DNA of 64,000 nucleotides from Fimbriosthenelais zetlandica (lineage: Eukaryota). The position numbers were made by a program, and so were the translations under genes. Each line of letters starts with the position of its first letter. Position 1 is the stretch's first letter. The stretch covers positions 22,506,001 to 22,570,000 of the forward strand of contig OZ365112.1 of the NCBI GenBank assembly GCA_977030845.1, in the 5' to 3' direction. Shown here in pieces: positions 1 through 57,400 of the stretch. The notes under the pieces are model-generated. The model was not told the DNA's origin and did no database searches. It saw only the letters and a list, made by a program, of their open reading frames with translations.

Positions 1-3000
1 ACAGGTTCGCCTGCATTGTGAATGTAGCCATCATCAATCATGGGTATTTTATCCTCATCAACAGGGGACGTTACCTGAGAGGTCTCTAAATGAACATTGG
101 TAGTTGTTACACATGGGTAACTTTCACTTTGACTATCTCCAATGATTTCTTGTGTAGAATCTTTCACTGGTAGTGGCGATACACGATCAGGGGGAGCATT
201 TTCTAGTTGACTGGCAGTCGGCAACTCATTTTTCAATTGATGAGATTGGCCTTTGAAAACGATACCACCCCTCAATCGTCGATCAACTGCAGGCCCTACC
301 TTTATTACTGGCCTGGATTCTATGGTTGGATTAAGCAAGACATCACCTTCAAATTGACCTTTAGGAATACTTTCAGGTGGCGGGACTTCTATCAGTGTAA
401 GTGGTGATTCTACCCTTTCTGTCACATTTGTGTGTCCACTGGTTTCTATATCTAGTCCCTCCTGACTTCTTCCCTTATCGATTTCCTTTGGAGGTCTCGA
501 TTTAAATGGTTCTGATTCTAATGCAGTCTGTCCAATCATTTGTTCCCTACTAGCCATCCGATGTTCTGCTTCCTCTCTCTCCAGTACCTGAACTAGATCC
601 TCCATTTTAGTACATATTTCAGAAATAGTTTCAGGAGATTTAGCACTATCTCTCGATGTCTGTTTTGATCGTTTTCTCCTGGGTTTGGGCTTGGGCGGAG
701 GCTCTGAAGACTCGTCTGTACTCTGAACTTCAGTCATTAATGAAGGGCCTTCCCTTCTATCAGTCATGCTATCATCTGTCTCATAGGCCTCGTTTACAAG
801 TCCCTGGTCAGATAGGTCATCAACAGAACGTCGGCTAACTAGGGGAAGACCAGTGTGGTCGATTTGTGGTGAAACTTGCATAGAAGAATAGCCCTTTGGT
901 TTATAATCCCTTACTGTTTTGCTTGATATCTCGTCAATCATTTTGGAGACTTCTTTCTTACCATTTCCTGACTTTACAATCAAGCCATAGGTACTGTTTG
1001 GGGACACAGTGGCAAGCCGTGTATTTTTCTCTGCGATGTCTGTATAAATAGGCTCTTTGGATGTGGCCTTAGTGTCAGAATCACTGCCGTGCATATCACT
1101 GACTACTTTGTGCTGGTGTCGTTTATTCAGTTCTGGCGTTACCAATACTCCAGGCTTTGCCTCATCATCAGCAGATCCCATTGCTGAGGGATCTCTTTCA
1201 AAAGCTCTCTGTTTTTTAAGTTTTGATCGTCTTGGCGGTCGTGGAGGAAAGCCAGCGAGATACCCTGGATCTGGTGAGAGTGGGCTCAGCTCAGGTGAGG
1301 TGGCACTGCTAGGGCTGAGCAAAGCTACTTCTGGTTCATCAAGATCTAGTTTTAATGAACCCAATGATGTGTTGATGTGCCTTTTTCTCCTGGGTGATGG
1401 CTGTATAAGGCACTCTGACTGACGAGCCCCCACTGTAGCACCATTTTCCTGCCTTTGACTTTCCACCCCTTCACCCTTTGCCTGCAAAGAAAAGAGTTTA
1501 TCACTTTGGGTAACGTCTTGATTTGGACACACTGACTCTCTACTTGATTGCACTAAATCGGTATCGAAATTATAATACTGTGAAACACCTGCATGATTTG
1601 CTAAAGGTGCAGCTTTTTTACCATCTTCCCATCTTTGCTTCCCATCAGTTCTCTTCATGGCATGTGGGGCCTTGGCAGAACCTGCTGCATTGGCCAGTCT
1701 CTGTTTTGAGGCAGCCCGTGAACGAGCTCTGCGAGGTGGGGGCACTGGGAATGGAGTAGATAGAGCAACACCTTCTTTGATAGGGCCATGTTTCTGTTTC
1801 GACTTTAGGTCCCCATCAGACTTACTAACAACCACTTTAGTTCCTGGGGTAAGTTTCTTATCAGACCGCCTCTCAGTACTCCGTCCTCGCCCCCCACCAT
1901 CTTTCCTTCGCTCAATGCTTCGGCTCTGATCACGCCTTCGTTGCTGACTAGTAGCATCAACTCGTTTGTCCTGACGGCCTCGGCCACTTCGAGACTCCCT
2001 GGCCCCAGCCTTATAAAGATTGTCATCAACAGTATTAGACCGCTGTCTTACTAACTGTTTCTCCTGAGCTTCTTTCTCAGCCAGGGCTCTTTTCACAAGC
2101 TCTGCATTCCTCTGTGCAGCAGACATACTGCTACTCCTATTGCCTTTTCTAGGTGGTGCTGTGGGGCTTTTTTGTGGTGTGGATTTAACAGATGACCTTT
2201 TAGATCTGGTTGGAGATTTGCCCTCATTTGTTATGTATTTCAATATATCAGGGGTCTTTATTTTGGGAGCTTTATCAAGAGATATCATTCTTTTAAGTTC
2301 TGGGGGGATATTGGGCCGTCGGGACCTTATACTACCACAGCAGAGGGCTGATAGGGGACCAGATGGAAAGTCATGAAGGCTATCACGGTGTATGTATTCC
2401 TTGTTTTTGGCTTTGTGAGAGCTCATTGAATAGTCAGACACCCTTGACCTGAGTGAACCTCCCCTTAATGAGGATTTTTCATCATAAGACACCTTGGATG
2501 ATATTGAGTACATGCTTCTCACTGTACTCGTTTTACTCATGGCATCATCTCTTTCCAGTGGCATATTAGAGCGGTGTGATCGGTGGGAAGACACTGGACT
2601 ATATTGGGACACAGCAGGATTTTCATTTTCATATTCTCTCCGAGATGAACCAGCTTCCTCAGGATAACCATTCACCTCTACAGAAGGCCAGTGAAGTCCA
2701 TAACCATCTGATGTACTTGGAAGTGTCGACTCCCCATCAGCATCATCATCACCGTTCTTTGCTTGTTCACGTTTCCTCTGTCTCTCCTGCTCTTCCTCAT
2801 CAAGCAGTGCTAATTCCAGAGGCAGACCTGTACGTAATCTATCAGCAAGCTTAGAAGCTTCAGTGTCTAACTGTAAAGGTTCATAAGTAACAGCCTCCTC
2901 GGAATTGGCCCTCCCCCACTCCTCAGGGGCATCGTTGGGTGACATGGCATACAAGTATGCACTCTCCCCAGGTCTCTGAGACAAAGCACTCCCCAGCTCT

Positions 3001-4738
3001 GCCCCTTCTAAATCTGCTACAGCATCTTTATTCACATCTGGTGCCTTATCTAAGGTCTTGAGCATGTCTTGCCTCCGTTTGTTTCGTTTATCATATAATT
3101 CCTTTTGTATTTTAGTCATATTCTGTTTTTGGTCTTCTTCCTCCTGCTTCATTTTTTCCTCAATTACTTTATCAAAGCTTTTTTCATTTTCTCGATCGTC
3201 ATCTATAGTGCGTTTCCTTATGGAAAAGAATTGTCTGCTTGCAAATTTCAGGTCATGGTCAAGGTCACCCGGTTTCACTGTAACATTCCTTGTTCCAAAT
3301 TTCGTCCTTTTATTATCCTCATCACCTGAACTGAGATCACTGTCTTCACTTTTATGAACATCTACTGTGATTCTCCCTGCTTGGAATCTTTGTCTCAAAT
3401 CTGTGTATATCCCACTAGGTTTATTTGCACCCACTGCAGAAGGCTGGCTCTTGAGAAAGCGTTCTTTCATAGCCAGCTCTTCTGGATTAGCTGTAAGCAA
3501 ATCTAAGCCAAGTTCTGTACCAAGTAGTTTTGGATCCAGTTTTTTTAATTGTTTCTTACCTGAGGTCCCCTTTTTCTTCCTATTTCTATGTGAGTCATTC
3601 TGCCCTTCATCAGAGACTTGGGGGTCCTCCTGGTGTCTCCTTTCCCTTTTTGTCTTCCTTTCTTTCTGACCATATTTCTGATCATAACTTTCCTGAGCAT
3701 TATATTTAGCTTTTGGGCGAGCCCCACCAAAAGCATCTTTTTTCCCTTTCTTCCTTGATTGGGGTTGTTTGAGTATACCATCTGTGGTAGACTTTCTTGT
3801 TCTATCTCTCTCGAGCTGAGCCAGTCTTATTCCATACTCATCACTAACTAGCTTGGTTCCAAACCTCACTTTCCTTTCTTCGTCCGAACCGTCATAATCC
3901 TCCGATTCCCCACCTTCTAAAGGGACCAGACAATCCTCAGCAGTCGGAGCACTTTCTACTGTACAGTCATATGGGAGGACGTGTACACCATAGGTTTGTA
4001 ACTCTGGAGAATGTTCTGGTGACTTCTCGGGTTTGGGCGGTTCAGGACGAGGTGGAAGTCTCTGAATTTCCAGTGTGGGATCACCCACTTTCATTAATGC
4101 ACGTCTAAGATGACCTACAGGCTCTTGCTCGATCTCATTGTCATCCTCTGCTGATGAGTAATCCTTGTATCTCCTCCCCCTCTTGTGATCCTCATCAGAG
4201 CCAGAGGCTACATACCCGTCATCCATACTATTTAATCTAGGAGGGGAGTTTCGTCTACCTGGTGGGGGCCACACAAAGCCTCTGTCGTCATAGTTGTTCT
4301 TGTTCATCAAAAACTCACGATATCGCTGCATTTCCTCTTCCCTTTGTCTCATGAGTTCTCTCTTTTCTGCTGCTAAAGCAATCTTTTTCAACTTCTCATC
4401 CTCAATTCGTTGTAGCTCACGACCTAGTTCCCTTTTGGCTTTCCTTTCTTTGGAAGCCTTTTTCTTCTTCTCTCTTTCCTCTTTGTCAGACAAATATAGA
4501 CTTGCCCTGCGGACTTCTAATTTTCGACGTGAATAGTCCCAATCACCACCAGATACCTCTTTTTCGCGTTCGGTAAGGTAGCTAGCAGCCTCCTGGGCCG
4601 CTGACTTCCTCCTGTCATACCGTTCTACTTCACCCGTGTTCCACTTTTTGTGTGTGTACACAGAACCATGGTGGTCAGCATGTTCCATGGCCTCCTGTTG
4701 TTCCTTTTCCCGGAGTCGGCGTCCGAAGACTGAGTTGC
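1..4738 (-). CDS. Giant internal coding exon (at least 1578 codons, open to the left window edge) of a large charged, low-complexity, probably disordered protein; nested gene or amphiphysin alternative exon
   Basis: Manual translation of the minus strand (codons starting at positions = 2 mod 3) gave no stop from 4736 to 1: NSVFGRRLREKEQQEAMEHADHHGSV...EEREKKKKASKERKAKRELGRELQRIEDEKLKKIALAAEKRELMRQREEEMQRY...IHNAGEP. Preceded by acceptor tgtatgctgtAG (phase 1). Missing from the ORF track, presumably because no stop falls inside the window. A run of plus-strand antisense shadow ORFs (1057-4536) is consistent with it. No domain recognised. Confidence 0.85.
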
Positions 4739-7055
4739 CTACAGCATACATTATTTCAGCAAATAAGTATATGATCTTCCAGAGAAATATCAGGAATATT
4801 GTGGATATCACATAAACACCTAGCTCATTTAAAAAGATTCCATCTGACATTAAAAATAAGTTATGTCATAGTGATGGAATAGTTCAATATCAATCGTAAT
4901 ATAGTTACTTGATTACTTTAGTGTGGAGTTGTGGATTATGTCCGTGTCACTGGAAAGTAGAGTTCTGTTGTCTCATTCAGGATGGTATAAATTCACACAA
5001 TAAGAGTAATCTCCTCTGAAACGGCTTCCACACATTTCATGCTTATTAATTGAGATATTAGTAAGTAATGGCCAGGGTTTATGGATTGGGAACACTGGTG
5101 AAGGAAGGAGTCAGGTGAAGGATGTCAGTAGTTTAGTATCCAGACTAGGTCAGCACAAAAAGTCATAAAGCTATACCCACCATTGACTCTTGAATTACGG
5201 TATCTGATGCACTGAATCAGCATCAAATGAGCTGAAATCACGTCTACACATTCACATGAGCAGATCAAGCGCCTGCGAAACCTACTGGTTAGTAGCAGTT
5301 TGCTCAACACAGTTCATAGCAAAGTTCAGTCAAGTCTAGCACAAGTCCATGTCTTAAATAATAGAAATACACCATGCCCAGGAGCATTAGAATAGTTCAA
5401 CAACAGCAACAGAAGCCATGCTCAGTAGATGGGTATCTGCAGGAAAGTATAATCAAATGAAGACTCATGCCAAGTGAGTGATAGGAAAGGACTCGGAAGA
5501 ACTCTGATTAGAGACAGAAGGACGATTAAAGGTAGTAGAGAAGCGTAACACAATATTTGGAATGTAATAAAATGCAAAACGGTTCAAGATGCTGGTTATT
5601 TTTGAACCACAAATACTAAGGGTAAGGTATTATTGGTGTCAAATAAAACTGTTTGCTGGTGGCGATCACACACACACTATCTCCCACAGTAGGTTGAGTG
5701 AAGAGCGTCCTTTATACCTACAAAGTAAAGCTTGATGTTTAATGTATTGTTTTTAACATGAGGACTCAAGACTCCCAGGTGTGCCTCCACATGTAGGTTG
5801 TAGATCAGAGAGCTGTATAGGCCAGCTCGAGGGTATCAACTCAAGAGCCCTCAAACTCCTCTCTCACAATGTTACTGCTCCAAAGCAGTGAGTTTAAATG
5901 AAGCTTTCCACACCTAATTGATTCCTTATTGTAAATTTAAATACTTCGTTATGAAGTTTCTTAACACAGTCCATGAAACGAAGCGATGATGTGATGTGGT
6001 CACTAACACGGTTTTTCTGTCTATCTCGTTTCAGGTTTCAGATGAATATGATGCACCACTGATGACTCACGAAGCATGAATATGAATTATCGTAATCATA
6101 TCATTGATTTTTCCATTACATCGGTTAGAGATATGCTATTCCTCATATTAAACCTGCAATTACTCCAACCAACAAGTCACGGTAGGGTGTCACGACCTCG
6201 ACCTGATCAAAATGCTAACAACCAAACGTACTGCTGAAGCAAAGTCACTGGACTCACAAACGAGCTTCCTCTGTATAGAGAAGATGCTTACAGAGTCTTG
6301 ATGGTTGTCAGGCTGAATAATTTTAAGAATTTTAATGTCCCCTCTCCTCCTGGTGACTTCCCCAACAGCTCTACCCTCTTCACCTACACAACTACTCCAG
6401 AGGTTCACCTTTATATGTATGTAAGTCCATGAGGGCAGCAGGGAGAGAGAGACTAATATACAGTTTAAAGCCCCAGGTTATAATCAGGCAAGGTAGCCAG
6501 TCCTGGTGACGCTTGGTGGGGGAGGAGGCCAGGGGCTCCAATCCCCCGGGTTAGCATGGGGCATCATGCCATGACAACATGAGATCAGGCCGTTATTACA
6601 AACTTCCAGCTGCATTGATCCTAAGTTGCTATAATTAGCTTGTACATTAAACTTATTGGCTGAGTGGCCTACGTGGGACTAGTCCATTTTAGGTTATCTC
6701 CCCTGAATTTGTCACGATCATAACAAAAGCGCGTAAATCTACCAGTTCTCAAGTTGGAATATACACGACGAAATAAGCAGCCATCGAAACGGGCCCCATC
6801 AGAGATTCAGCACAGGAGCAGGTGACTGATGTGTGTGACATTAACCCACTAATCTAGCAGGCACTAGGTGATGGCGGTGGTGGTGGTGGGGATGTGGGTT
6901 CAAGTCTTTACGTTACAGTCTGGCCCCACATCATAATGCACTGTCAAGTTATGGCTGCTTGTTATCCAAGATCCATCCACAAACTGTTTCCATTCCAGCT
7001 TAACCCTTTTATCTTAAAATCCACCACAGAGACCGCAGATGGTTAGCCACCTCAC

Positions 7056-8691: not shown

Positions 8692-10960
8692 CCACCATTT
8701 GCTCGTCTCTAGCTCTGTTTCCGCGGGTAGGGCTTTCCTGACCGAGGCTCATTTGTCTCACGCACAAGAAACATGTGAATTATCTACCTGTCATTATTCA
8801 AAATATACCTTATAAATAAAGAGCATATCACATTATGCCGTCTGTACATTTTGAATGACAGATCTATAGTATGCTTTATTTTTAGGAAACATGTGAAGGT
8901 TTCAAGATATGAAGGTTTCGAGATTCACATGATAAAAAATTGTCCATTAAAATATTGGGGAGATTGACCAGCCCATTAAACCTTTATAACATTAGTGACC
9001 TGAGCATGCTTGAGTTAGTGTAATGAACTCATATCATGGCATTATCCTGGCAGGACAGCCAGCAGAGATTTTTTGATTTAGTATCATGGGGGAGATGTCA
9101 ATCATGTCGTTGGTTACAGAGGGTTTGTTAGGCGGGTAGAGGCTTATCTCTGCCCGCCAGCCAGCCTCCTCTCTGCCGTGACCAGCTCACAATAGGAGCG
9201 CAGTGAGACCTATTCCCATACTCTACCACTGTTAACTTTAATCCCGAGCAAATTTGCTGAGTAAGATGCTATGTCAATCTTATGTTATATCAGACATTTC
9301 TAAGGTTAAACCTATACAGGTTATTATCAACTTATGCGAATATATATCGGGGACCAAAAATTAGAAAAAAAAATGGAATGTCAATGTCATTATTTTTGGA
9401 AGGCTAAATCGTAAAATAGTATGAGGTTATAAATGCTGGTTGCCCCCTATCAGATTCTAGGAATCGGTGCCTCCCCAACCTCAGTAACACAAGTAAAGGA
9501 TGTGGCAGAGAAGGAACTGCTTGAACAATGAGTAAGACTGAGTTCATACCAAGCTGTCGGAGCCACCGACATAAAGCTAATGGTCAATCAGTTTACCAAC
9601 CAAGTACAAAATCGGTACAAAAGGTTTAAATATGAACATAATTCACCTGTCTAAAGATTCAAGAAGTCATACCAAGGATACCAGCTTGCCAAGGATAAAA
9701 AGCAGAGCCAAATCCCCACAAAACCTTTCAGATAAATGAATTAAATGTAGGCTAAGTTGGCTGGCAGATTGAATTTAGTGCATTAACAACCAATAGCCTG
9801 TCCAGCAGAACTGATGGATGGTCATGACCGACGATCAATCTAGATTAATAAGTGTCACTTTTTAATCAAGATTCAATCAATGCCAATAACATTCCCCCAC
9901 ACCCTACACACAAACCCACACAGCCACTCACAGACACAAGTTAACTCACACATACAGGCTAATCAATAAAGGTCCAGAGCTGGTCCATCATATAGGTGTT
10001 CTGGTGTGAGGCTTTACTGACGGATCCACGTCAATATTTACACGTGCATTTTGTCACACCAGATAAAAACACCAAAAGTAGACCAAAAGGAAGATGTAAA
10101 GAAAAAATATGCCGAGAAGAGTAAAACAATCTAAATTGTATAATTGATACCAAAATGGATAATAAATTAGGTAATAAAAAGATTATACATAGCCTAAATT
10201 GACCGGGTGGTTTTGTCCTACAAGTATATGACTTTTATGAAGTTAAAACTGAACACAACTCAATATGTAAAAATAGAGAAAAGTGCCAATATGTGATAAA
10301 TGTATGGATTATCCATTTGAGGGGAGAAGGAGGTGTTACCAACCCGGTGGGTGTATGATTGGGGGAGCAGCAGGAGGAGGAGGAGGAGAGGTAAATCTTT
10401 CTGCTTGTTAAGACTCAGCCTGTCCTCCCTCTGTCCACAACACTCATCAAGCCTGATCCTCACACACCACTCATCTACAGACTCAGGCAATCACAGTGGG
10501 ATATGGTCTCCACATCTGCCGGCCTCCAGACGAGCTATCCTTGTGTGGTCACAATGTTATCCTCACTTAGTGTTAATCCTGGATGGAAGATGAGTCTGAG
10601 AGAAGGAGAAGGGAGAAGGTATTGAGGGTGGTAGTGGTGGTAGCAGCTCCTGTCAGTGCCTGTAGTTCTCTGTAGTAGCTCCAAGCAACAAGCTCTCCCA
10701 GCAGTCACAACATGAAGAGGTCCTAGGACAGCAAGCCACCACCACTATGATCCCACACCACCCACCACCACTACCACCACCACTACCACCGCCACACCAG
10801 CCTGTCCTTTACTCACTGTCCAGCTCAATGTAACTGTGGCAGGGGCCCTTTTAAAGGATAAATAATTTTTCCAGTCCTTCTTCTTCTCCCCCTCTTGTTT
10901 GAGCACCTGTCCCTTTCTTAGCTCGTATCCAGGTAGTTCTCAGGTTGAGGGGCTCATGGT

Positions 10961-35525: not shown

Positions 35526-35603
35526 CTTTTCTTTTGTCCTGAAGACCCGTTTTTGTAAAACTTTCGCAAACGTACCACCCCTAGACGGTCCACTCTCCGC
35601 CAT
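35526..35603 (-). CDS. AMPH: Amphiphysin/BIN1-family N-BAR protein, coding exon 1 (N-terminal amphipathic helix H0)
   Basis: ATG at 35603 gives MAESGPSRGGTFAKVLQKRVFRTKEK followed by AAG|GTAAGA (phase 0). Aligns to human amphiphysin GIFAKNVQKRLNRAQEK and BIN1 IASNVQKKLTRAQEK, ending at the same EK position. Remaining BAR/SH3 exons not found in the window. Confidence 0.72.
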
Positions 35604-52102: not shown

Positions 52103-53330
52103 TACTATATGGATGGAGGCCATGGAGGAGGGAGGACGTCCAGGTTAACTTTACTCCTCCACACTACGTGAATATACTCATCAATACTCACAGACACACG
52201 TCTCTCTCATCATTATTGAGGCACCACACACCTGTATTGGAAGGACAACAGAAATCAGTGAAGGCAGCATATATTTCGGTGATCACCAAAAGTTCTGAGG
52301 ATAGAATATTCTTCTCAACAATTTCTCTATACCCTTCAATCATAGCTGGATGGTGAATATAGGAGGAGGTCCAGGACTTGTGTATTGATCTCTCTGTTCC
52401 TGTGTCTGGGGACTGGTCACGGTTTGATAGTTTGATCACTAACTACATTCATCATTTTTGCAGTCCTGATAAATGGATCCTATCTAATTTCGTCATGAAT
52501 TGTTAATGTTCGTCGAGTACTGAAAGCTTCCTCATCGTTTGGACAACTTGTAAGGCATTTTATAATACAGGAGCAATATTGTATTTTGACTGATTAACTT
52601 CATGAAGTCAAGTTCGAAATTCAAGTTCATCAAATTGGTGATCTGAGACAGTGAGAGTGATCTCTTAATGAACAGTCATCATTTTATGAGTGCGCCTCTG
52701 ATCTGAGACCAGGTTGTTGGAGATTTGGTTGAAGGAATGACTGTGGCAGAGAGGTCTTGAATCTTCAAGGTCTGCCTACCCACCTGTAGCTGGTCATCTG
52801 AGGTATTCCTGGATCCATTGCCAGTTCTCTATTGTCCTACTCCACTCTCCCGCCATTGCCGACGCCAGCCCGCCCTTTACCTCGCATGTCAAACTGCAGT
52901 CTGCCAAAGGGAGGAGAGCTGGGCATTTTTGTCCTGGTCCTACATGCCAACTATTTACATGGGTCTTTCTTACCAACAACATTTTCTCAATTAGTTTACA
53001 AATTGTGACGAGTCTCCTACATACATGTACAGTATTCTGTGCTGTGTTCAGAGAGTGTTCCACGCTGAACTGTTAAGCTTGTCGCCAAGTTCATAGAAAC
53101 TTGGGTATAAACCTCCATATTACTGGAAAATCTGTAAAGCCTATACTCTCAGATGCCAGGCCAAATAAGATATTAATTTTTGCCCAAAAGAGAAGGCCAA
53201 GAAATGCCATGATTGAAGAAGACTGTACCAATACCACCAGCCTAAGAATTGTTGTTTAATATGTTACGGACCAATCTACTTTGGTGAATATTTATTAACA
53301 TAAATTGTGTGTAAAGATCCTGTTGGTATT

Positions 53331-54420
53331 ATGAACATGGACATGAGTTCGTGTGTGGTGAGTGGACCATGGCATATGCCTGTCTCATACAGGGATGACC
53401 TATCAGCCAGCCCTATGGGAATGATAGGTGGTGGAGTGGGAGGAGGAGGGGGAGCATATCAAAATATGCAACCATCTTTATCCCCTCTGTCTGGTTCTTA
53501 TAACGGCTACACCACCTCCTCATACAGAGACAGTTCCTCCTGCTCGCAGATCCTCTCCCCCACCACTGACCATCATCCCCATCAGGAGGGGGACGAGGAG
53601 GAGGCCTCCAGTGGCTGCCATGGCAATGGTACTGGTCTAGAGAGTGGACTTATGGTGGGTGGACTTGGTCACCAGAACGCTGGCATGGGAGGAGGTGGTG
53701 GGGGTCTGGATAGGAAAATCCTGACTAATTTAGACACTTATAAAGACACTTACATGAAAGATGCCTATGGATGTATGCGCTCCAACAACCATGGAGGAGT
53801 TGGGGGAGACATGTTAGGGCACGATATGAAAGACAAATCCCCAATGGTTGACTATGGGATGAAGGACTTTACTAATTGTGGGTATAATGATAACTTTGGG
53901 TTGGGTTTGAAGTCAGAGAACTCCTGTTACAGATCTGGTTCTCCATTAGGGGTCACTTCTCTTGTTCAACAAAATCATCTGCCTCAATATGCCATGTCAG
54001 GTTATTCACTGCCCGCCTATAGCAGTGCTACTCCTGGCTTACAAACCAACCATTCAGCAAGTGGTGGAGGACTTATAGGAGGGGGAGCCATGCCTGCCTG
54101 CTCCTCGTCCTACCAGGCGGGCGGCCCGCCATCATACACCCCGCCTGAACCGCTACAAGCCATCCCGTCCAGCCCCTCTGCCGGAACCACCTTTCCCACC
54201 AACAGTTGTATGTATTCCCCATGGGGAGCTCCGCCGACTTCCCCGCCCGGCATGCTGGGATCAGCGGGCGGGGTAGCGCCTCACCTCTCCCCGCCTGGCG
54301 TGGGCGCTGCGGCCGCCGCTGCTGCCGTCACGTCGGTACCTCTCAAACCTTCACCAGTCATTATGACCACAGCTACAGCGGTCAGCCTGCCCAGTACCAT
54401 GTCTACATACGCTCTCAAAG
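53331..54420 (+). CDS. First large coding exon (363 codons + phase 1) of a probable developmental transcription factor; Gly/Ser/Pro/Ala-rich activation-like region, no DNA-binding domain within the window
   Basis: ORF 53307..54464 in the track; ATG at 53331 (MNMDMSSCVV...); donor AAAG|GTAGGA at 54420/54421; GC-rich relative to flanks; poly-Gly, poly-Ala, SP/TP repeats and a PPSY motif. No downstream coding exon recognised up to 64000. The transcription-factor call is inferred from composition only. Confidence 0.7.
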
Positions 54421-57400
54421 GTAGGACAGAGAGATCCTTTAATTCCCTTTCTTTAAAAAGTTGAAAAAGATTCGCGTCAAACTCAACTTTAATTTCAAAA
54501 GTCGCGTCATTTTACTCCTGAAAAAAGTATTTATGAAGGGTGATGCCTTTGGTCAAATTAATTCAAGGAGTATTCTTTCTTTTTCTATCATTGTCCTTTC
54601 AGTTTAAAATTTTATTTACTGTTTGCCATCCTAAATGTTCATTTGCGCGCTTCAGAGCAAGACAAATTAACATCTTGGAAGCTTATTTTCATATAGACCT
54701 ACACCCACTATAGTATTATTAATTCAGAGAGATACTTTCAGTGAGAACTTTGTTAATGACATATTATTCCATCAAACTAGAAACAAAATGAGTCTACTAA
54801 AGTGCCAGGTCTACTGTTCTTCCCGTGGGAAAATAATTGGTCGCCTTTTTGTGGACGCGAATCCCGCGTCAATGCCCCACCCCCATATACTACTTACACT
54901 TTCCCGTCAGTGAACGCTATGAGAAGCGCGAGACGCGCCTGGCGCCTCTTCTTGGAGGCCAAGGACGGACACTTAATATTCACTTCTGAGGGTCGGTCCA
55001 CTATTTGTCATTATTTTAAGATATTGCTAGACCACATGAATCAGAAGATTGGATATATTTGAGTCACTGGGGTCGAAAGTGGGGATGTTCCCATAGATTC
55101 CAGGGCCGGAGTAGGCTACTGGGGACCCCATTGGAAGCAAGAAACAATATACAGCCTTCCATACCTTTTTATCCCTGTGTCGCCGACTATATAGTTACAT
55201 GCCACTACAACCAAATGACTATATCGATTTCCAATGATAAGCGTGTGTTATAACTCTAATCATAGCTAGGCCGCAGTGGGGAGCAGATGGGAGGGCCAGC
55301 TCGCATGCTGATAAGAGTAAAGTAAATATGATTACATAAGCTGTGGTTATGGGGTGGTAGATGGGAGAGAGAGCTGTCCAAATCATCACTCACTTCTCCT
55401 TCACTGTCTCCCCGCAGCTGCGCCCACCGCAGCCCTCTTTTACCCTCCAAGGTCATCTGGGTCATCAAAACTGTCACGTCAAAATAGATTCCTTCTGCCC
55501 CATTTTCAAAATTACTTTAACTTTCGGCAATTAAGAATCAATTCTTGCTGAAACCATTTGGTGCCGTGTTCAGCTTGCACCTTAAATTGAAAAATTTATA
55601 GTACAAATCTCCCATTTAAAATATTGGCGATATTTCACACTTTGATAAACGCTATGACAAGGCGGACCTAGGCATTTGGCGAGGTTAGAACTGCCAAGTG
55701 GACCTGGTATAATCTAAAAAGGCCAAATGCATTTCAAAGCATCTGTTACATATGCGAGTCATGTCCCTTATCTTTTGTTGCATAAAGATAAGGGCATGTC
55801 AGTTTCAAAACGAGCTGTTTAACTATTTCTCGAAGAGGCCCTAATGAATGAAGTTGCCTTGAATTTTTTTTACTTTTTTTTGGATTCTTGCTATGCATGC
55901 TTCCCCCACAAAGCTCAAAAACCATGCTTCCCCCATTAAATAAATCCTTGGTTTGTTCTTCATGGATTCAAAGGGCCATTATAACATAAATAATTGCTTT
56001 TTGGCCTTTTTTGCAATACTCAGTTTGAATCTTTGAAAGTTGTGGTGGAGGGTTTTTGTTTTCACCCGAGCGCGGCGGCTCATTCTGGAGGGAGGGTAAA
56101 TCCTTTGTGGCCTTGGCTACATAGTCCCGGCAAGCATGAATGATGAGCCTCAACAGTTGATATTTCTTCAACAAAAGCCTTGTTGGCATTGGGTACTTGC
56201 ATGAAATGTTAGCAATGTCAACAAACAATAAGGGAAATGGTTTTGTTGGCAGTTCTGGTGACAGCGTCCAGACCGTGTTGGTGAATATTCTATAACTAAA
56301 ACATCTCACCAATAGGTCTTCCTCTGCTCCATGATACAGTGTTGCCACTTACGTTTAGATAACCCAGCAGGAGTGCAAATTTAACTGTAATCTTACCTAT
56401 AAAATAGTCAACATATTGTCCCTAAAACCAAAGATAACGCGCTTATGAACTTGCCCTAATATTGCATTGGTATAGCGAAATTAAGATTTCATGTTATAGG
56501 GCCTAAGTCTCTCCTGAGATTTCATTTCACTCATTATGTGAGGCAGGGAATACATTCAACTGCGTGACTAAGAATTATCTTGGTGACTAAATATGGTTCA
56601 TGGTAGTGGTTGCCTATAGTAAGCCGACTGGCCACCCTCCAAGACACAGTTGGGCAAAGGACCCATTAATATAATGACCACCACTTACCATAACTAGTGA
56701 GAGACGGATTGTGCAATGGCAAACAGTGAATCTCTTGCCATGTAACGCCCATGTTTTCAGTTAAAATAACCATGAGGTGACAGTAGTAATGATAGCAAAT
56801 TTGTCAAGGTAACCCTCGAGAGAAAAGCAAATAATATACAATTTACTGTTGATTTTGTCCCTCATACAGCAAGGAGCCCTTTTTATTTAAGAGGATTTGT
56901 CCACCTCCGATGATATTATTAAATAACAGGGACTTACAAGCAGGTATAACAGTTTCTAGCTGATATATTTACACAACATTAGTTGTTCCTCATGCACGAG
57001 TAGTAGAGTGCTCTGAGGAAGTCATCTGTGACTGGAATCATAACAGATTCACAACTCAATGATCCATGAAGCTGAGTAGTTCAAAGCCAACTAAGGTCGA
57101 TCAGAACCAAATTTGAATGGAGATGGAGGCTGAATAATGAATAAGTGAACCTCCTAATGGCACTTATCAAATATTCATCGAGAATTTCAACTCTTCCTGT
57201 GATACCAAAATGTGTACCCATGGAGTCAGACTCAGTAGGAAATGTCCATAAGGAAAGCCTGTAGCGATTTACCCTACAGTTAAATAGATTTTAGTATATT
57301 TCTTGAATGGGACATTGAAGCGCATGCCATTGTCATCCTAAACCCTGCACAGCTTTAACTTATACGTGCTTCTAATATTGTAACAAAGCAAAATGTAGAT

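What the first reader, a model, noticed from the sequence alone, without database searches (positions are those of the whole stretch)
1..4738. Hidden ORF of at least 1578 codons invisible to the ORF track
The minus-strand frame is stop-free over 4.7 kb in AT-rich DNA, far longer than any ORF in the flanking intronic DNA. The product has a K/E/R coiled-coil-like stretch (about 4500-4310), acidic and basic patches, and many SP/RS sites, with no recognisable globular domain. An exon this size is exceptional beside the 29-224 nt exons of the neighbouring PSMD3, protease and SCLY genes.
Basis: seen in the sequence. Interest (0 to 1): 0.7.

Follow-up and report, generated by a model that had tools for sequence, protein, structure and literature searches.

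The report
Giant single-exon membrane-anchored protein gene
The stop-free stretch is the first 4.8 kb of a real, intron-less 11.2-kb gene for a 3,725-residue, membrane-anchored and mostly unstructured protein with no known relatives. It lies inside the first intron of the amphiphysin gene here and in at least two related species.

Summary
The minus-strand frame is open over window 3-4865 and continues 6.3 kb past the window start: 3,730 codons stop to stop.

The exon boundary proposed at 4738 is wrong. The coding sequence starts at a conserved ATG (window 4850), with in-frame stops just upstream. Its first 40 codons encode the protein's only transmembrane helix.

The product (3,725 aa) has:
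- a signal-anchor helix;
- an 80-residue E/K/R helix;
- about 1,750 residues of conserved disordered sequence with short motifs;
- an acidic region;
- 79 tandem copies of a 16-residue unit;
- an acidic tail.

It matches no Pfam, PDB or named protein. An exhaustive scan of 1.84 billion representatives found three relatives and a word-indexed search a fourth, from three other species (two are haplotigs); the three with DNA held are single uninterrupted ORFs.

Evidence that it is a real gene:
- dN/dS is about 0.11 against the closest relative.
- It is single-copy.
- Its position just upstream of amphiphysin exon 2, on the same strand, is conserved.

I read it as an independent nested gene for a membrane-tethered cytosolic scaffold. 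Its invariant P-x-x-P-x-R-R-x-R-S-R-x-x-S motif fits the published amphiphysin SH3 ligand consensus, so it may bind its host gene's product. That link is untested. No RNA data were available.

The parts
1..4850 (-). Window part of the single-exon coding sequence: codons 1-1616 plus two bases of codon 1617. The ATG is at 4850-4848. The ORF continues outside the window to a TGA at G000:C13:22499675-22499673, for 3,725 codons in all.
   Evidence: open frame. (conserved ATG with upstream stops). (dN/dS about 0.11). (homologues are single ORFs).
4743..4817 (-). N-terminal transmembrane (signal-anchor) helix, residues 12-36. The N-flank is acidic and the C-flank basic (GRRLREK), which predicts that the large C-terminal part is cytosolic.
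   Evidence: Kyte-Doolittle 2.2, the only 19-residue stretch of the protein above 1.6; helix, pLDDT about 85; conserved in L006 and P0002/P0004.
4299..4541 (-). Long E/K/R-rich alpha-helix, residues 104-184. It is either a coiled coil or a single stable helix, and it is the best conserved block of the protein.
   Evidence: pLDDT 91-97; 82-97% identity to P0001 and 30-60% to P0002/P0003; many invariant columns.
1707..1754 (-). Invariant composite motif P-x-x-P-x-R-R-x-R-S-R-x-x-S, residues 1033-1048 (here PFPVPPPRRARSRAAS). It combines an SH3-ligand motif of the amphiphysin type with an adjacent RxRxxS basophilic-kinase site.
   Evidence: P1035, P1038, R1040, R1041, R1043, S1044, R1045 and S1048 are invariant in all five sequences.. 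Motif definitions come from PMC3219718.
1221..1250 (-). Second conserved basic proline motif, (D)FPxRPPR(R/K), residues 1201-1210. It fits the PxRPxR consensus.
   Evidence: present in own, P0001, P0002/P0004 and P0003..
35526..35603 (-). Coding part of exon 1 of the host gene, an amphiphysin/BIN homologue. It encodes 26 residues and ends in phase 0 at a GTAAGA donor. Exon 2 lies outside the window at about C13:22497140, so the giant ORF sits in intron 1 on the same strand.
   Evidence: exon 1. (downstream BAR and SH3 exons). (best PDB matches are BIN1, amphiphysin and BIN2, E about 1e-7 to 3e-8).

Best explanation
This is an independent, intron-less protein-coding gene nested in sense orientation in intron 1 of the amphiphysin gene.

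Shown:
- The coding sequence has 3,725 codons, from an ATG at window 4850 to a TGA 6.3 kb beyond the window start.
- It is conserved under purifying selection.
- It is single-copy.
- It keeps the same position relative to amphiphysin exon 2 in relatives down to about 35% protein identity.

Inferred:
- The product is a signal-anchored membrane protein. A short acidic N-terminus is followed by one transmembrane helix and a basic flank, so the remaining roughly 3,690 residues face the cytosol.
- A rigid E/K/R helix (residues 104-184) projects from the membrane.
- Next comes a long disordered region that works as a scaffold through short linear motifs. These include an invariant PxxPxRRxRSRxxS motif and a DFPxRPPRR motif, both of the amphiphysin SH3-ligand type and each next to an RxRxxS phosphosite. 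A third is the invariant KPPYxLWGExxW...HHPHFPxH motif, whose partner is unknown.
- The distal half is fast-evolving and acidic. In this lineage it has expanded a 16-residue charge-neutral unit, QASEEGREAVSPVRSR, to 79 tandem copies. Each copy carries an RSRQAS site and an SP site, which makes a large phospho-tunable spacer or multivalent platform.

Most likely role: it tethers SH3-domain endocytic or membrane-remodelling proteins, plausibly amphiphysin itself, to a membrane. Which membrane that is remains unknown.
For: Open frame:
- 3,730 codons stop to stop.

Start codon:
- The ATG is conserved in position, with in-frame stops 5-10 codons upstream, in own, L006 and L004/L008.

Homologues:
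- An exhaustive phmmer scan of 1.84 billion representatives found P0001, P0002 and P0003.
- The word-indexed search of the 90%-identity clusters found P0001, P0002 and P0004.
- P0001, P0002 and P0004 are uninterrupted ORFs of 2,951-3,349 aa. No DNA was held for P0003, which is 1,472 aa and is followed directly by a 1,036-aa ORF.

Selection:
- Over codons 1-1800, pN is 0.235 against pS 0.724, dN/dS about 0.11.
- Over codons 41-400, dN/dS is 0.04.
- Two haplotigs of one relative differ by four indels of 2 to 81 residues, yet both ORFs stay open.
- Within the repeat array, variation falls mostly on third codon positions: 99 against 28 and 48 at the other two.

Not a transposon:
- Single copy in the genome.

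Nesting:
- Amphiphysin exon 2 lies 2.5-5.2 kb downstream on the same strand in own, L006/L007 and L004/L008.
- The host gene is identified by its SH3 and BAR exons.

Independent 3' end:
- About 230 nt of non-coding sequence aligns at 81% mean column identity with L006 (106 nt at 81% by BLAST).
- It contains an AATAAA and lies 1.8-2.0 kb after the stop and before exon 2, while synonymous sites are saturated.

Architecture:
- One transmembrane segment.
- Helix 104-184 at pLDDT above 90, with the rest of the first 360 residues mostly below 50.
- Conservation profile.
- 48-bp repeat with 79.3 copies.

Motifs:
- Invariant columns P1035...S1048 and K1722...P1752.
- P.[RK]P.[RK] occurs 5-6 times in P0002 and P0003 against 0.3 expected; 0 of 1,000 shuffles reach that.
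- PxRPxR and P(I/V)(P/A)PPR are published amphiphysin SH3 ligands (PMC3219718).
Against: - There is no expression evidence. No RNA or DNA run could be listed for this locus.
- Topology, target membrane and every binding partner are inferred from sequence alone.
- The complex prediction of the host SH3 with the motif region gave no verdict (score 0.05).
- In this species the PxRPxR-type motif count is only weakly above chance: 2 observed against 0.36 expected, reached by 51 of 1,000 shuffles. Basic proline motifs are common in disordered proteins.
- The ORF ends at TGA, then four codons, then TAG, and then 135 further open in-frame codons. The annotated C-terminus may therefore be a recent truncation or an assembly or haplotype variant.
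- A highly charged region after a single N-terminal membrane helix could instead be lumenal, as in triadin.
Confidence: 0.6

Rival explanations
1. The giant ORF is not a separate gene. It is a giant alternative exon of amphiphysin, either a terminal exon spliced from exon 1 or an alternative first exon spliced on to exon 2. That would give a giant amphiphysin isoform.
For: The ORF has the same strand as the host gene, lies inside its intron 1 and is only 2.5 kb upstream of exon 2. This arrangement is conserved in other species. There is an AG at window 4740-4739.
Against: - Exon 1 ends in phase 0, and joining it to 4738 gives a frame with a stop after 37 codons.
- The ORF has its own conserved ATG with upstream stops. 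It also has a conserved transmembrane helix upstream of that AG, under purifying selection.
- No phase-0 donor of matching position is shared by the four sequences in the last 300 codons.
- All relatives end in a stop before exon 2.
- A conserved AATAAA-bearing element lies between the stop and exon 2.
Confidence: 0.08
2. The topology is the reverse of the one proposed. The N-terminal hydrophobic segment acts as a type II anchor or uncleaved signal, and the huge charged region lies in the ER/SR lumen or outside the cell. It would then be a triadin- or mucin-like polyampholyte rather than a cytosolic scaffold.
For: There is a single N-terminal hydrophobic segment followed by a highly charged, repeat-rich, domain-free region. 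Triadin-like lumenal proteins have this layout (own knowledge).
Against: - The charge distribution has an acidic N-flank and a net basic C-flank, which favours a cytosolic C-terminus.
- Cysteine is only 0.4% of residues, and there are only 10 NxS/T sites in 3,725 residues.
- The conserved motifs are of cytosolic types: SH3 ligand, RxRxxS and SP sites.
Confidence: 0.15
3. It is a decaying or non-functional ORF, a formerly coding region now drifting, or an ORF inflated by an assembly artefact in the tandem repeat.
For: - Two in-frame stops are followed by 135 more open codons.
- One third of the protein is a young 92%-identical repeat absent from the closest relative.
- There is no RNA evidence.
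Against: - dN/dS is about 0.11 over 1,800 codons against a relative whose synonymous sites are saturated.
- ORFs of about 3,000 codons are intact in two other species, including two haplotypes of one.
- The chance of 3,725 stop-free codons in 44% GC DNA is negligible.
- Repeat variants are biased to third codon positions.
Confidence: 0.05
4. It is a transposon or viral ORF.
For: It is a long intron-less ORF inside an intron.
Against: - Single copy in the 447-Mb genome.
- No reverse transcriptase, integrase, transposase or capsid domain in it or in its relatives.
- The position is the same in three species.
Confidence: 0.01

Closest known systems
RRBP1 (p180) and kinectin: ER proteins anchored by an N-terminal transmembrane helix, with a huge cytosolic part
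   Same: Both have a short N-terminus, a single N-terminal anchor helix, a basic membrane-proximal region, a long tandem array of short charged repeats (10-residue units in p180, from my own knowledge) and long helical or coiled-coil stretches. This is what the protein most plausibly works like.
   Different: There is no sequence relationship. No Pfam family, including p180's region family, matched at E up to 0.1. The repeat unit here is 16 residues and unrelated in sequence. Most of this protein is disordered rather than coiled coil. ER localisation is not shown.
Amphiphysin SH3 ligands: the dynamin proline-rich domain (PxRPxR) and alphavirus nsP3 (P(I/V)(P/A)PPR followed by basic residues)
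   Same: The invariant site reads PVPPPRRAR in this species and P0001. It reads PKRPARR in P0002 and PTRPPRR in P0003. These are the two published motif forms (PMC3219718). The host SH3 keeps an acidic stretch, DDPEDQDEGW.
   Different: Only the motif is shared. Binding is untested, since the complex prediction gave no verdict. The rest of the protein has nothing in common with dynamin or nsP3.
Sense-oriented nested genes in long first introns
   Same: It is an intron-less gene lying wholly within a 44-kb first intron of a host gene, on the same strand.
   Different: The nested gene fills about a quarter of the intron with one 11.2-kb coding exon. The nesting is conserved to about 35% protein identity. 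The nested product carries a candidate ligand motif for a domain of the host product.

Membership tests
RRBP1/p180-kinectin type ER anchor proteins | Sequence match to the family's Pfam models or to any named member | tested here: not met
   Pfam gave nothing at E up to 0.1 for the window part, the rest of the ORF, or P0001-P0003. No named homologue turned up in the protein searches.
RRBP1/p180-kinectin type ER anchor proteins | Single N-terminal transmembrane anchor with a large C-terminal part and a tandem short-repeat array | tested here: met
   There is one hydrophobic segment at residues 12-36. There are 79 copies of a 16-residue unit. This is an architectural likeness only.
Amphiphysin/BIN isoform | BAR or SH3 domain in the same reading frame, or an in-frame splice to amphiphysin exons | tested here: not met
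   There is no BAR or SH3 in the ORF. Joining exon 1 to the AG at 4740-4739 is out of frame. No conserved phase-0 donor lies near the C-terminus. RNA evidence is unavailable.
Amphiphysin SH3 ligands | PxRPxR or P(I/V)(P/A)PPR motif with following basic residues | tested here: met
   Residues 1035-1045 and 1202-1209 carry the motif. The first site is invariant in five sequences. The definition comes from PMC3219718.
Amphiphysin SH3 ligands | Physical binding to the amphiphysin SH3 domain | tested here: inconclusive
   Complex prediction with the SH3 given as its two exon pieces plus residues 1188-1227 scored 0.05 against a mark of 0.34. The tool's verdict was 'no answer'.
Transposable element ORF | Multiple copies in the genome and transposon or retroviral domains | tested here: not met
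   One match in the genome, which is itself. No Pfam domains. The location is syntenic in other species.
Functional protein-coding gene | Purifying selection on the reading frame across species | tested here: met
   dN/dS is about 0.11 over codons 1-1800 against L006. ORFs are intact in the relatives.
Functional protein-coding gene | Transcription and translation | not testable with these tools
   No sequencing run could be listed for the locus.

The most novel reading that the evidence does not exclude
The host and nested genes form a functional pair. The giant membrane-anchored protein encoded in amphiphysin intron 1 would be a lineage-specific receptor that recruits amphiphysin to a particular membrane. 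It would do so through its invariant PxxPxRRxRSRxxS site, switched by phosphorylation at RxRxxS. The conserved sense-strand nesting would then couple the expression of ligand and SH3 protein.
Probability: 0.2. Interest if true: 0.65.

Novelty: new variant of a known kind. Interest (0 to 1): 0.45.

Why it matters
- Annotation: this is an 11.2-kb single coding exon that gene finders and ORF tracks can miss or split. It encodes one of the largest proteins of this genome and belongs to a family with no named member in the databases searched.
- Biology: it is a clear case of a giant disordered protein whose membrane-proximal half is strongly constrained while its distal half turns over quickly. The turnover includes in-frame indels between haplotypes and a 79-copy repeat expansion in one lineage.
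- Possible host link: if the motif match to the amphiphysin SH3 domain is real, it would be an unusual example of a nested gene encoding a partner of its host gene's product. It would also point to a new membrane receptor for amphiphysin in this animal group.
- If not: it is an ordinary lineage-restricted nested gene.

Tried and rejected
- RNA or DNA read evidence: the look-up of sequencing runs listed no run for window 1-5500 (rna) or 3300-4900 (any).
- Domain and family searches found nothing: Pfam on all parts and on the relatives, a PDB profile search of the N-terminal 360 residues, and the ESM Atlas.
- A profile search with the full-length alignment returned only P0001, because low-complexity words filled the candidate list. 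It is uninformative.
- Complex prediction on the host SH3 (as two exon-encoded chains) plus residues 1188-1227 scored 0.05, 'no answer'. This is neither for nor against binding. The set-up, with a split SH3 and a short disordered partner, is outside the tool's calibration.
- Fusion to amphiphysin was rejected on frame at the 4738 acceptor. No conserved phase-0 donor was found.
- The 135-codon open stretch after the two stops has no counterpart in the relatives.
- A 42-nt GT...AG interval spanning both stops would keep the frame. I consider it too short to propose as an intron.
- A literature search for a gene nested in amphiphysin found none, and a search for the sample accessions also found none.
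- The organism was not identified. 'Probable annelid' is another agent's unchecked note.
- Fold searches of the N-terminal model were not run, because a lone long helix gives meaningless matches.
Full report
**1. The observation**

A six-frame scan shows one outstanding open stretch in the window: minus strand, window 3-4865, 1,621 codons. The next longest is 386 codons. The open frame is offset by one base and runs on upstream of 4738.

The window is G000:C13:22506001-22570000. With the flanking 10 kb fetched, the frame stays open for another 6.3 kb, to a TGA at C13:22499675-22499673. That is 3,730 codons stop to stop.

The ORF track missed it because ORFs that run off an end of the source are not listed. 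The coding strand is purine-rich, with strongly negative AT and GC skew on the plus strand over 1-4500. This fits the E/K/R/S-rich product.

**2. Where the coding sequence starts**

The first ATG of the open frame is at window 4850-4848. In three relatives with DNA available, an ATG sits at the equivalent position, with in-frame stops 5-10 codons upstream. These are L006 (true ATG at 9962; the database protein P0001 was called from a GTG) and L004/L008. The encoded N-termini align.

They show pN 0.118 against pS 0.566. They encode the only strongly hydrophobic segment of the whole protein, residues 12-36, with Kyte-Doolittle 2.2. AlphaFold2 predicts this segment as a helix.

The exon therefore does not begin at 4738. 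The coding sequence begins in this exon and contains no intron: 3,725 codons, 11,175 bases plus the stop.

**3. Is it a real gene?**

- **Homologues.** An exhaustive phmmer scan of 1.84 billion cluster representatives with the first 1,200 residues after position 4736 found three relatives:
  - P0001: 2,951 aa, 68% identity.
  - P0002: 3,262 aa, 36% identity.
  - P0003: 1,472 aa, followed directly by a 1,036-aa ORF on its contig.
  - A word-indexed search added P0004 (3,349 aa), the second haplotig of P0002's sample.
  - None has a name, a Pfam domain or an NCBI/UniRef source.
  - P0001, P0002 and P0004 are single uninterrupted ORFs on genomic contigs. No DNA was held for P0003.
- **Selection against L006.** A Nei-Gojobori comparison gives pN 0.235 and pS 0.724 over codons 1-1800, so dN/dS is about 0.11 with synonymous sites saturated. 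It is 0.04 over codons 41-400 and rises to 0.35-0.48 over codons 1601-2040.
- **Flanking DNA.** It is essentially unalignable between the two species apart from amphiphysin exon 2 and two short patches.
- **Haplotigs.** P0002 and P0004 differ by four indels of 36, 81, 28 and 2 residues in the acidic half, with both ORFs staying open, and have dN/dS 0.39.
- **Copy number.** The ORF is single-copy in the 447-Mb genome.

Together these points exclude chance, a transposon and a dead ORF.

**4. Genomic context**

The ORF lies in intron 1 of an amphiphysin/BIN homologue, on the same strand.

- Exon 1 (26 codons, ATG at window 35603, donor GTAAGA after 35526) is 30.7 kb upstream of the giant ORF's ATG.
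- Exon 2 (LLENLGKADRTTDE...) is about 2.5 kb downstream of the stop. Further BAR exons and two SH3 exons follow.
- The identity of the host gene was tested exon by exon against PDB sequences:
  - The SH3 exon hits BIN1/amphiphysin-2 SH3 at E 3e-8.
  - A BAR exon hits BIN2, amphiphysin and BIN1 at E 1e-7 to 3e-6.
  - A third exon gave nothing.
- The same arrangement, with the giant ORF followed 2.9-5.2 kb later by amphiphysin exon 2 on the same strand, holds in L006/L007 and in L004/L008. The nesting therefore predates a divergence to about 35% protein identity.

**5. Nested gene or amphiphysin isoform?**

Several observations favour an independent gene:

- Exon 1 ends in phase 0. Joined to the AG at 4740-4739 it reads the frame, which stops after 37 codons.
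- The ORF has its own conserved start and membrane anchor.
- No phase-0 donor of comparable position is shared by the four sequences in the last 300 codons.
- About 1.8-2.0 kb after the stop, about 230 nt aligns with L006 at 81% mean column identity (106 nt at 81% by BLAST).
  - It contains an AATAAA at the same relative place.
  - It lies upstream of exon 2.
  - I read this as the conserved 3' end of an independent transcript.

This is inference. Without RNA data a shared transcript cannot be excluded.

**6. Anatomy of the product**

| Residues | Feature |
|---|---|
| 1-11 | Acidic N-terminus |
| 12-36 | Transmembrane helix, followed by GRRLREK |
| 72-184 | Helical; residues 104-184 form one 81-residue E/K/R-rich helix at pLDDT above 90. 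This is the best conserved block (up to 97% identity to P0001, 53-60% to the distant relatives) |
| 185-1800 | Predicted or compositionally disordered, yet 50-85% identical to P0001, with islands conserved in all relatives |
| 1761-2040 | Acidic (net charge -56), poorly conserved |
| 2041-3306 | 79 tandem copies of a 48-bp, 16-residue unit |
| 3307-3725 | Acidic tail with two conserved patches and three more repeat units |

- **Conserved islands in 185-1800:**
  - NYDDxGxxWPPP
  - GHLxRA
  - RKVxFG
  - GGARPK
  - the invariant P1035-x-x-P-x-R-R-x-R-S-R-x-x-S1048
  - DFPxRPPR(R/K) at 1200-1208
  - K1722-PPYxLWGExxWxR...HHPHFPxHxP1752
- **The repeat array:**
  - The consensus unit is QASEEGREAVSPVRSR and copies are 92% alike.
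  - The array is absent from P0001, so it expanded in this lineage.
  - Each unit is charge-neutral and carries an RSRQAS (RxRxxS) site and an SP site.
  - Among units, differences fall 28, 48 and 99 on codon positions 1, 2 and 3.

**7. How it probably works**

Shown: the gene, its constraint and its architecture.

Inferred:

- The charge distribution around the single helix favours a cytosolic C-terminus. So do the very low Cys content, the sparse NxS/T sites and the cytosolic-type motifs. That makes it a signal-anchor protein whose layout resembles p180/RRBP1 or kinectin, without any sequence relationship.
- The invariant motif reads PVPPPRRAR here and in P0001. That is the P(I/V)(P/A)PPR form through which alphavirus nsP3 binds amphiphysin SH3 domains.
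- The same site reads PKRPARR in P0002 and PTRPPRR in P0003. [quoted passage not shown]
- P.[RK]P.[RK] occurs 5-6 times in P0002/P0004 and P0003 against 0.3 expected, reached by 0 of 1,000 shuffles. In this species it occurs only twice, reached by 51 of 1,000 shuffles.
- The host SH3 keeps the acidic stretch DDPEDQDEGW.

The most economical mechanism is a membrane-tethered, multivalent, phospho-regulated scaffold for SH3 proteins of the endocytic and membrane-remodelling machinery, with amphiphysin as the leading candidate. A complex prediction gave no verdict and counts neither way. Which membrane is involved is unknown.

**8. Loose end at the C-terminus**

The ORF ends TGA CAG AAT CTA GAG TAG. 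The same frame then stays open for 135 more codons of similar acidic, Ser-rich composition, up to a TAA. The other two forward frames of that stretch have 7 and 16 stops, and only 5 of 20,000 composition-preserving shuffles are stop-free. The stretch has no counterpart in the relatives.

It is probably a recently truncated or haplotype-variable C-terminus, and reads are needed to settle it.

**9. Novelty and verdict**

No described family, domain or named protein matches. No paper linking a nested gene to amphiphysin was found. The kind of object is familiar: a lineage-restricted, intron-less nested gene for a giant anchored disordered protein with a tandem repeat.

Three things are unusual:
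- its size;
- the conserved sense nesting in amphiphysin intron 1;
- the invariant motif that matches the host product's SH3 specificity.

Other notes of this scan on the same window had already raised the 'nested gene or giant isoform' question (s1-207644), and this report favours the nested gene. Another note calls the genome a probable annelid (s1-207641); I did not check that.

Noticed in passing
outside the window: G000:C13:22499253-22499675 (L003 3251-3673, minus strand): The giant ORF ends TGA, four codons, TAG. The same frame then stays open for 135 more acidic, Ser-rich codons up to a TAA. Only 5 of 20,000 shuffles are stop-free. The stretch is not conserved in the relatives. It may be a recent truncation, a haplotype variant or an assembly error.
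   Followed up: partly
outside the window: G000:C13:22497782-22498062 (L003 1780-2060, minus strand), aligned to L006 20650-20920: About 230 nt of non-coding sequence between the giant ORF and amphiphysin exon 2 aligns with a relative at 81% mean column identity (106 nt at 81% by BLAST). It includes an AATAAA at the same relative position. It is a candidate 3' end of the nested gene, or else an intronic regulatory element of amphiphysin. A second 43-nt patch lies at 22498673-22498715.
   Followed up: partly
window 35526-35603 (-) and G000:C13:22487873-22497140: The host gene is an amphiphysin/BIN homologue with BAR and C-terminal SH3 domains. Exon 1 is in the window and exon 2 onward lies beyond the window start. 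Intron 1 is about 44 kb, and the coding exons seen are 72-102 nt.
   Followed up: yes
L004 versus L008 (two contigs of one sample, ERZ25767047): Two haplotigs of a related species encode versions of the protein of 3,262 and 3,349 residues. They differ by indels of 36, 81, 28 and 2 residues in the acidic half and are 96% identical. This shows rapid length polymorphism with the reading frame preserved.
   Followed up: yes
contig of P0003 (ERZ26222911; no DNA held): The 1,472-aa homologue is followed immediately by a 1,036-aa ORF that overlaps it by 4 bases, and it is preceded by a 30-aa ORF. The gene is probably split by frameshifts in that assembly, so P0003 is likely a fragment of a protein of about 2,500 aa.
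   Followed up: no
window 53304-54461 (+): This is the second longest open stretch of the window, at 386 codons. It has no Pfam match at E up to 0.01. Its nature was not examined.
   Followed up: partly
window 5005-5015 (-), about 160 nt upstream of the ATG: A good splice-acceptor-like site (pyrimidine run followed by CAG) lies upstream of the start codon. The giant exon may therefore be preceded by a 5'-UTR intron. This cannot be tested without RNA.
   Followed up: no
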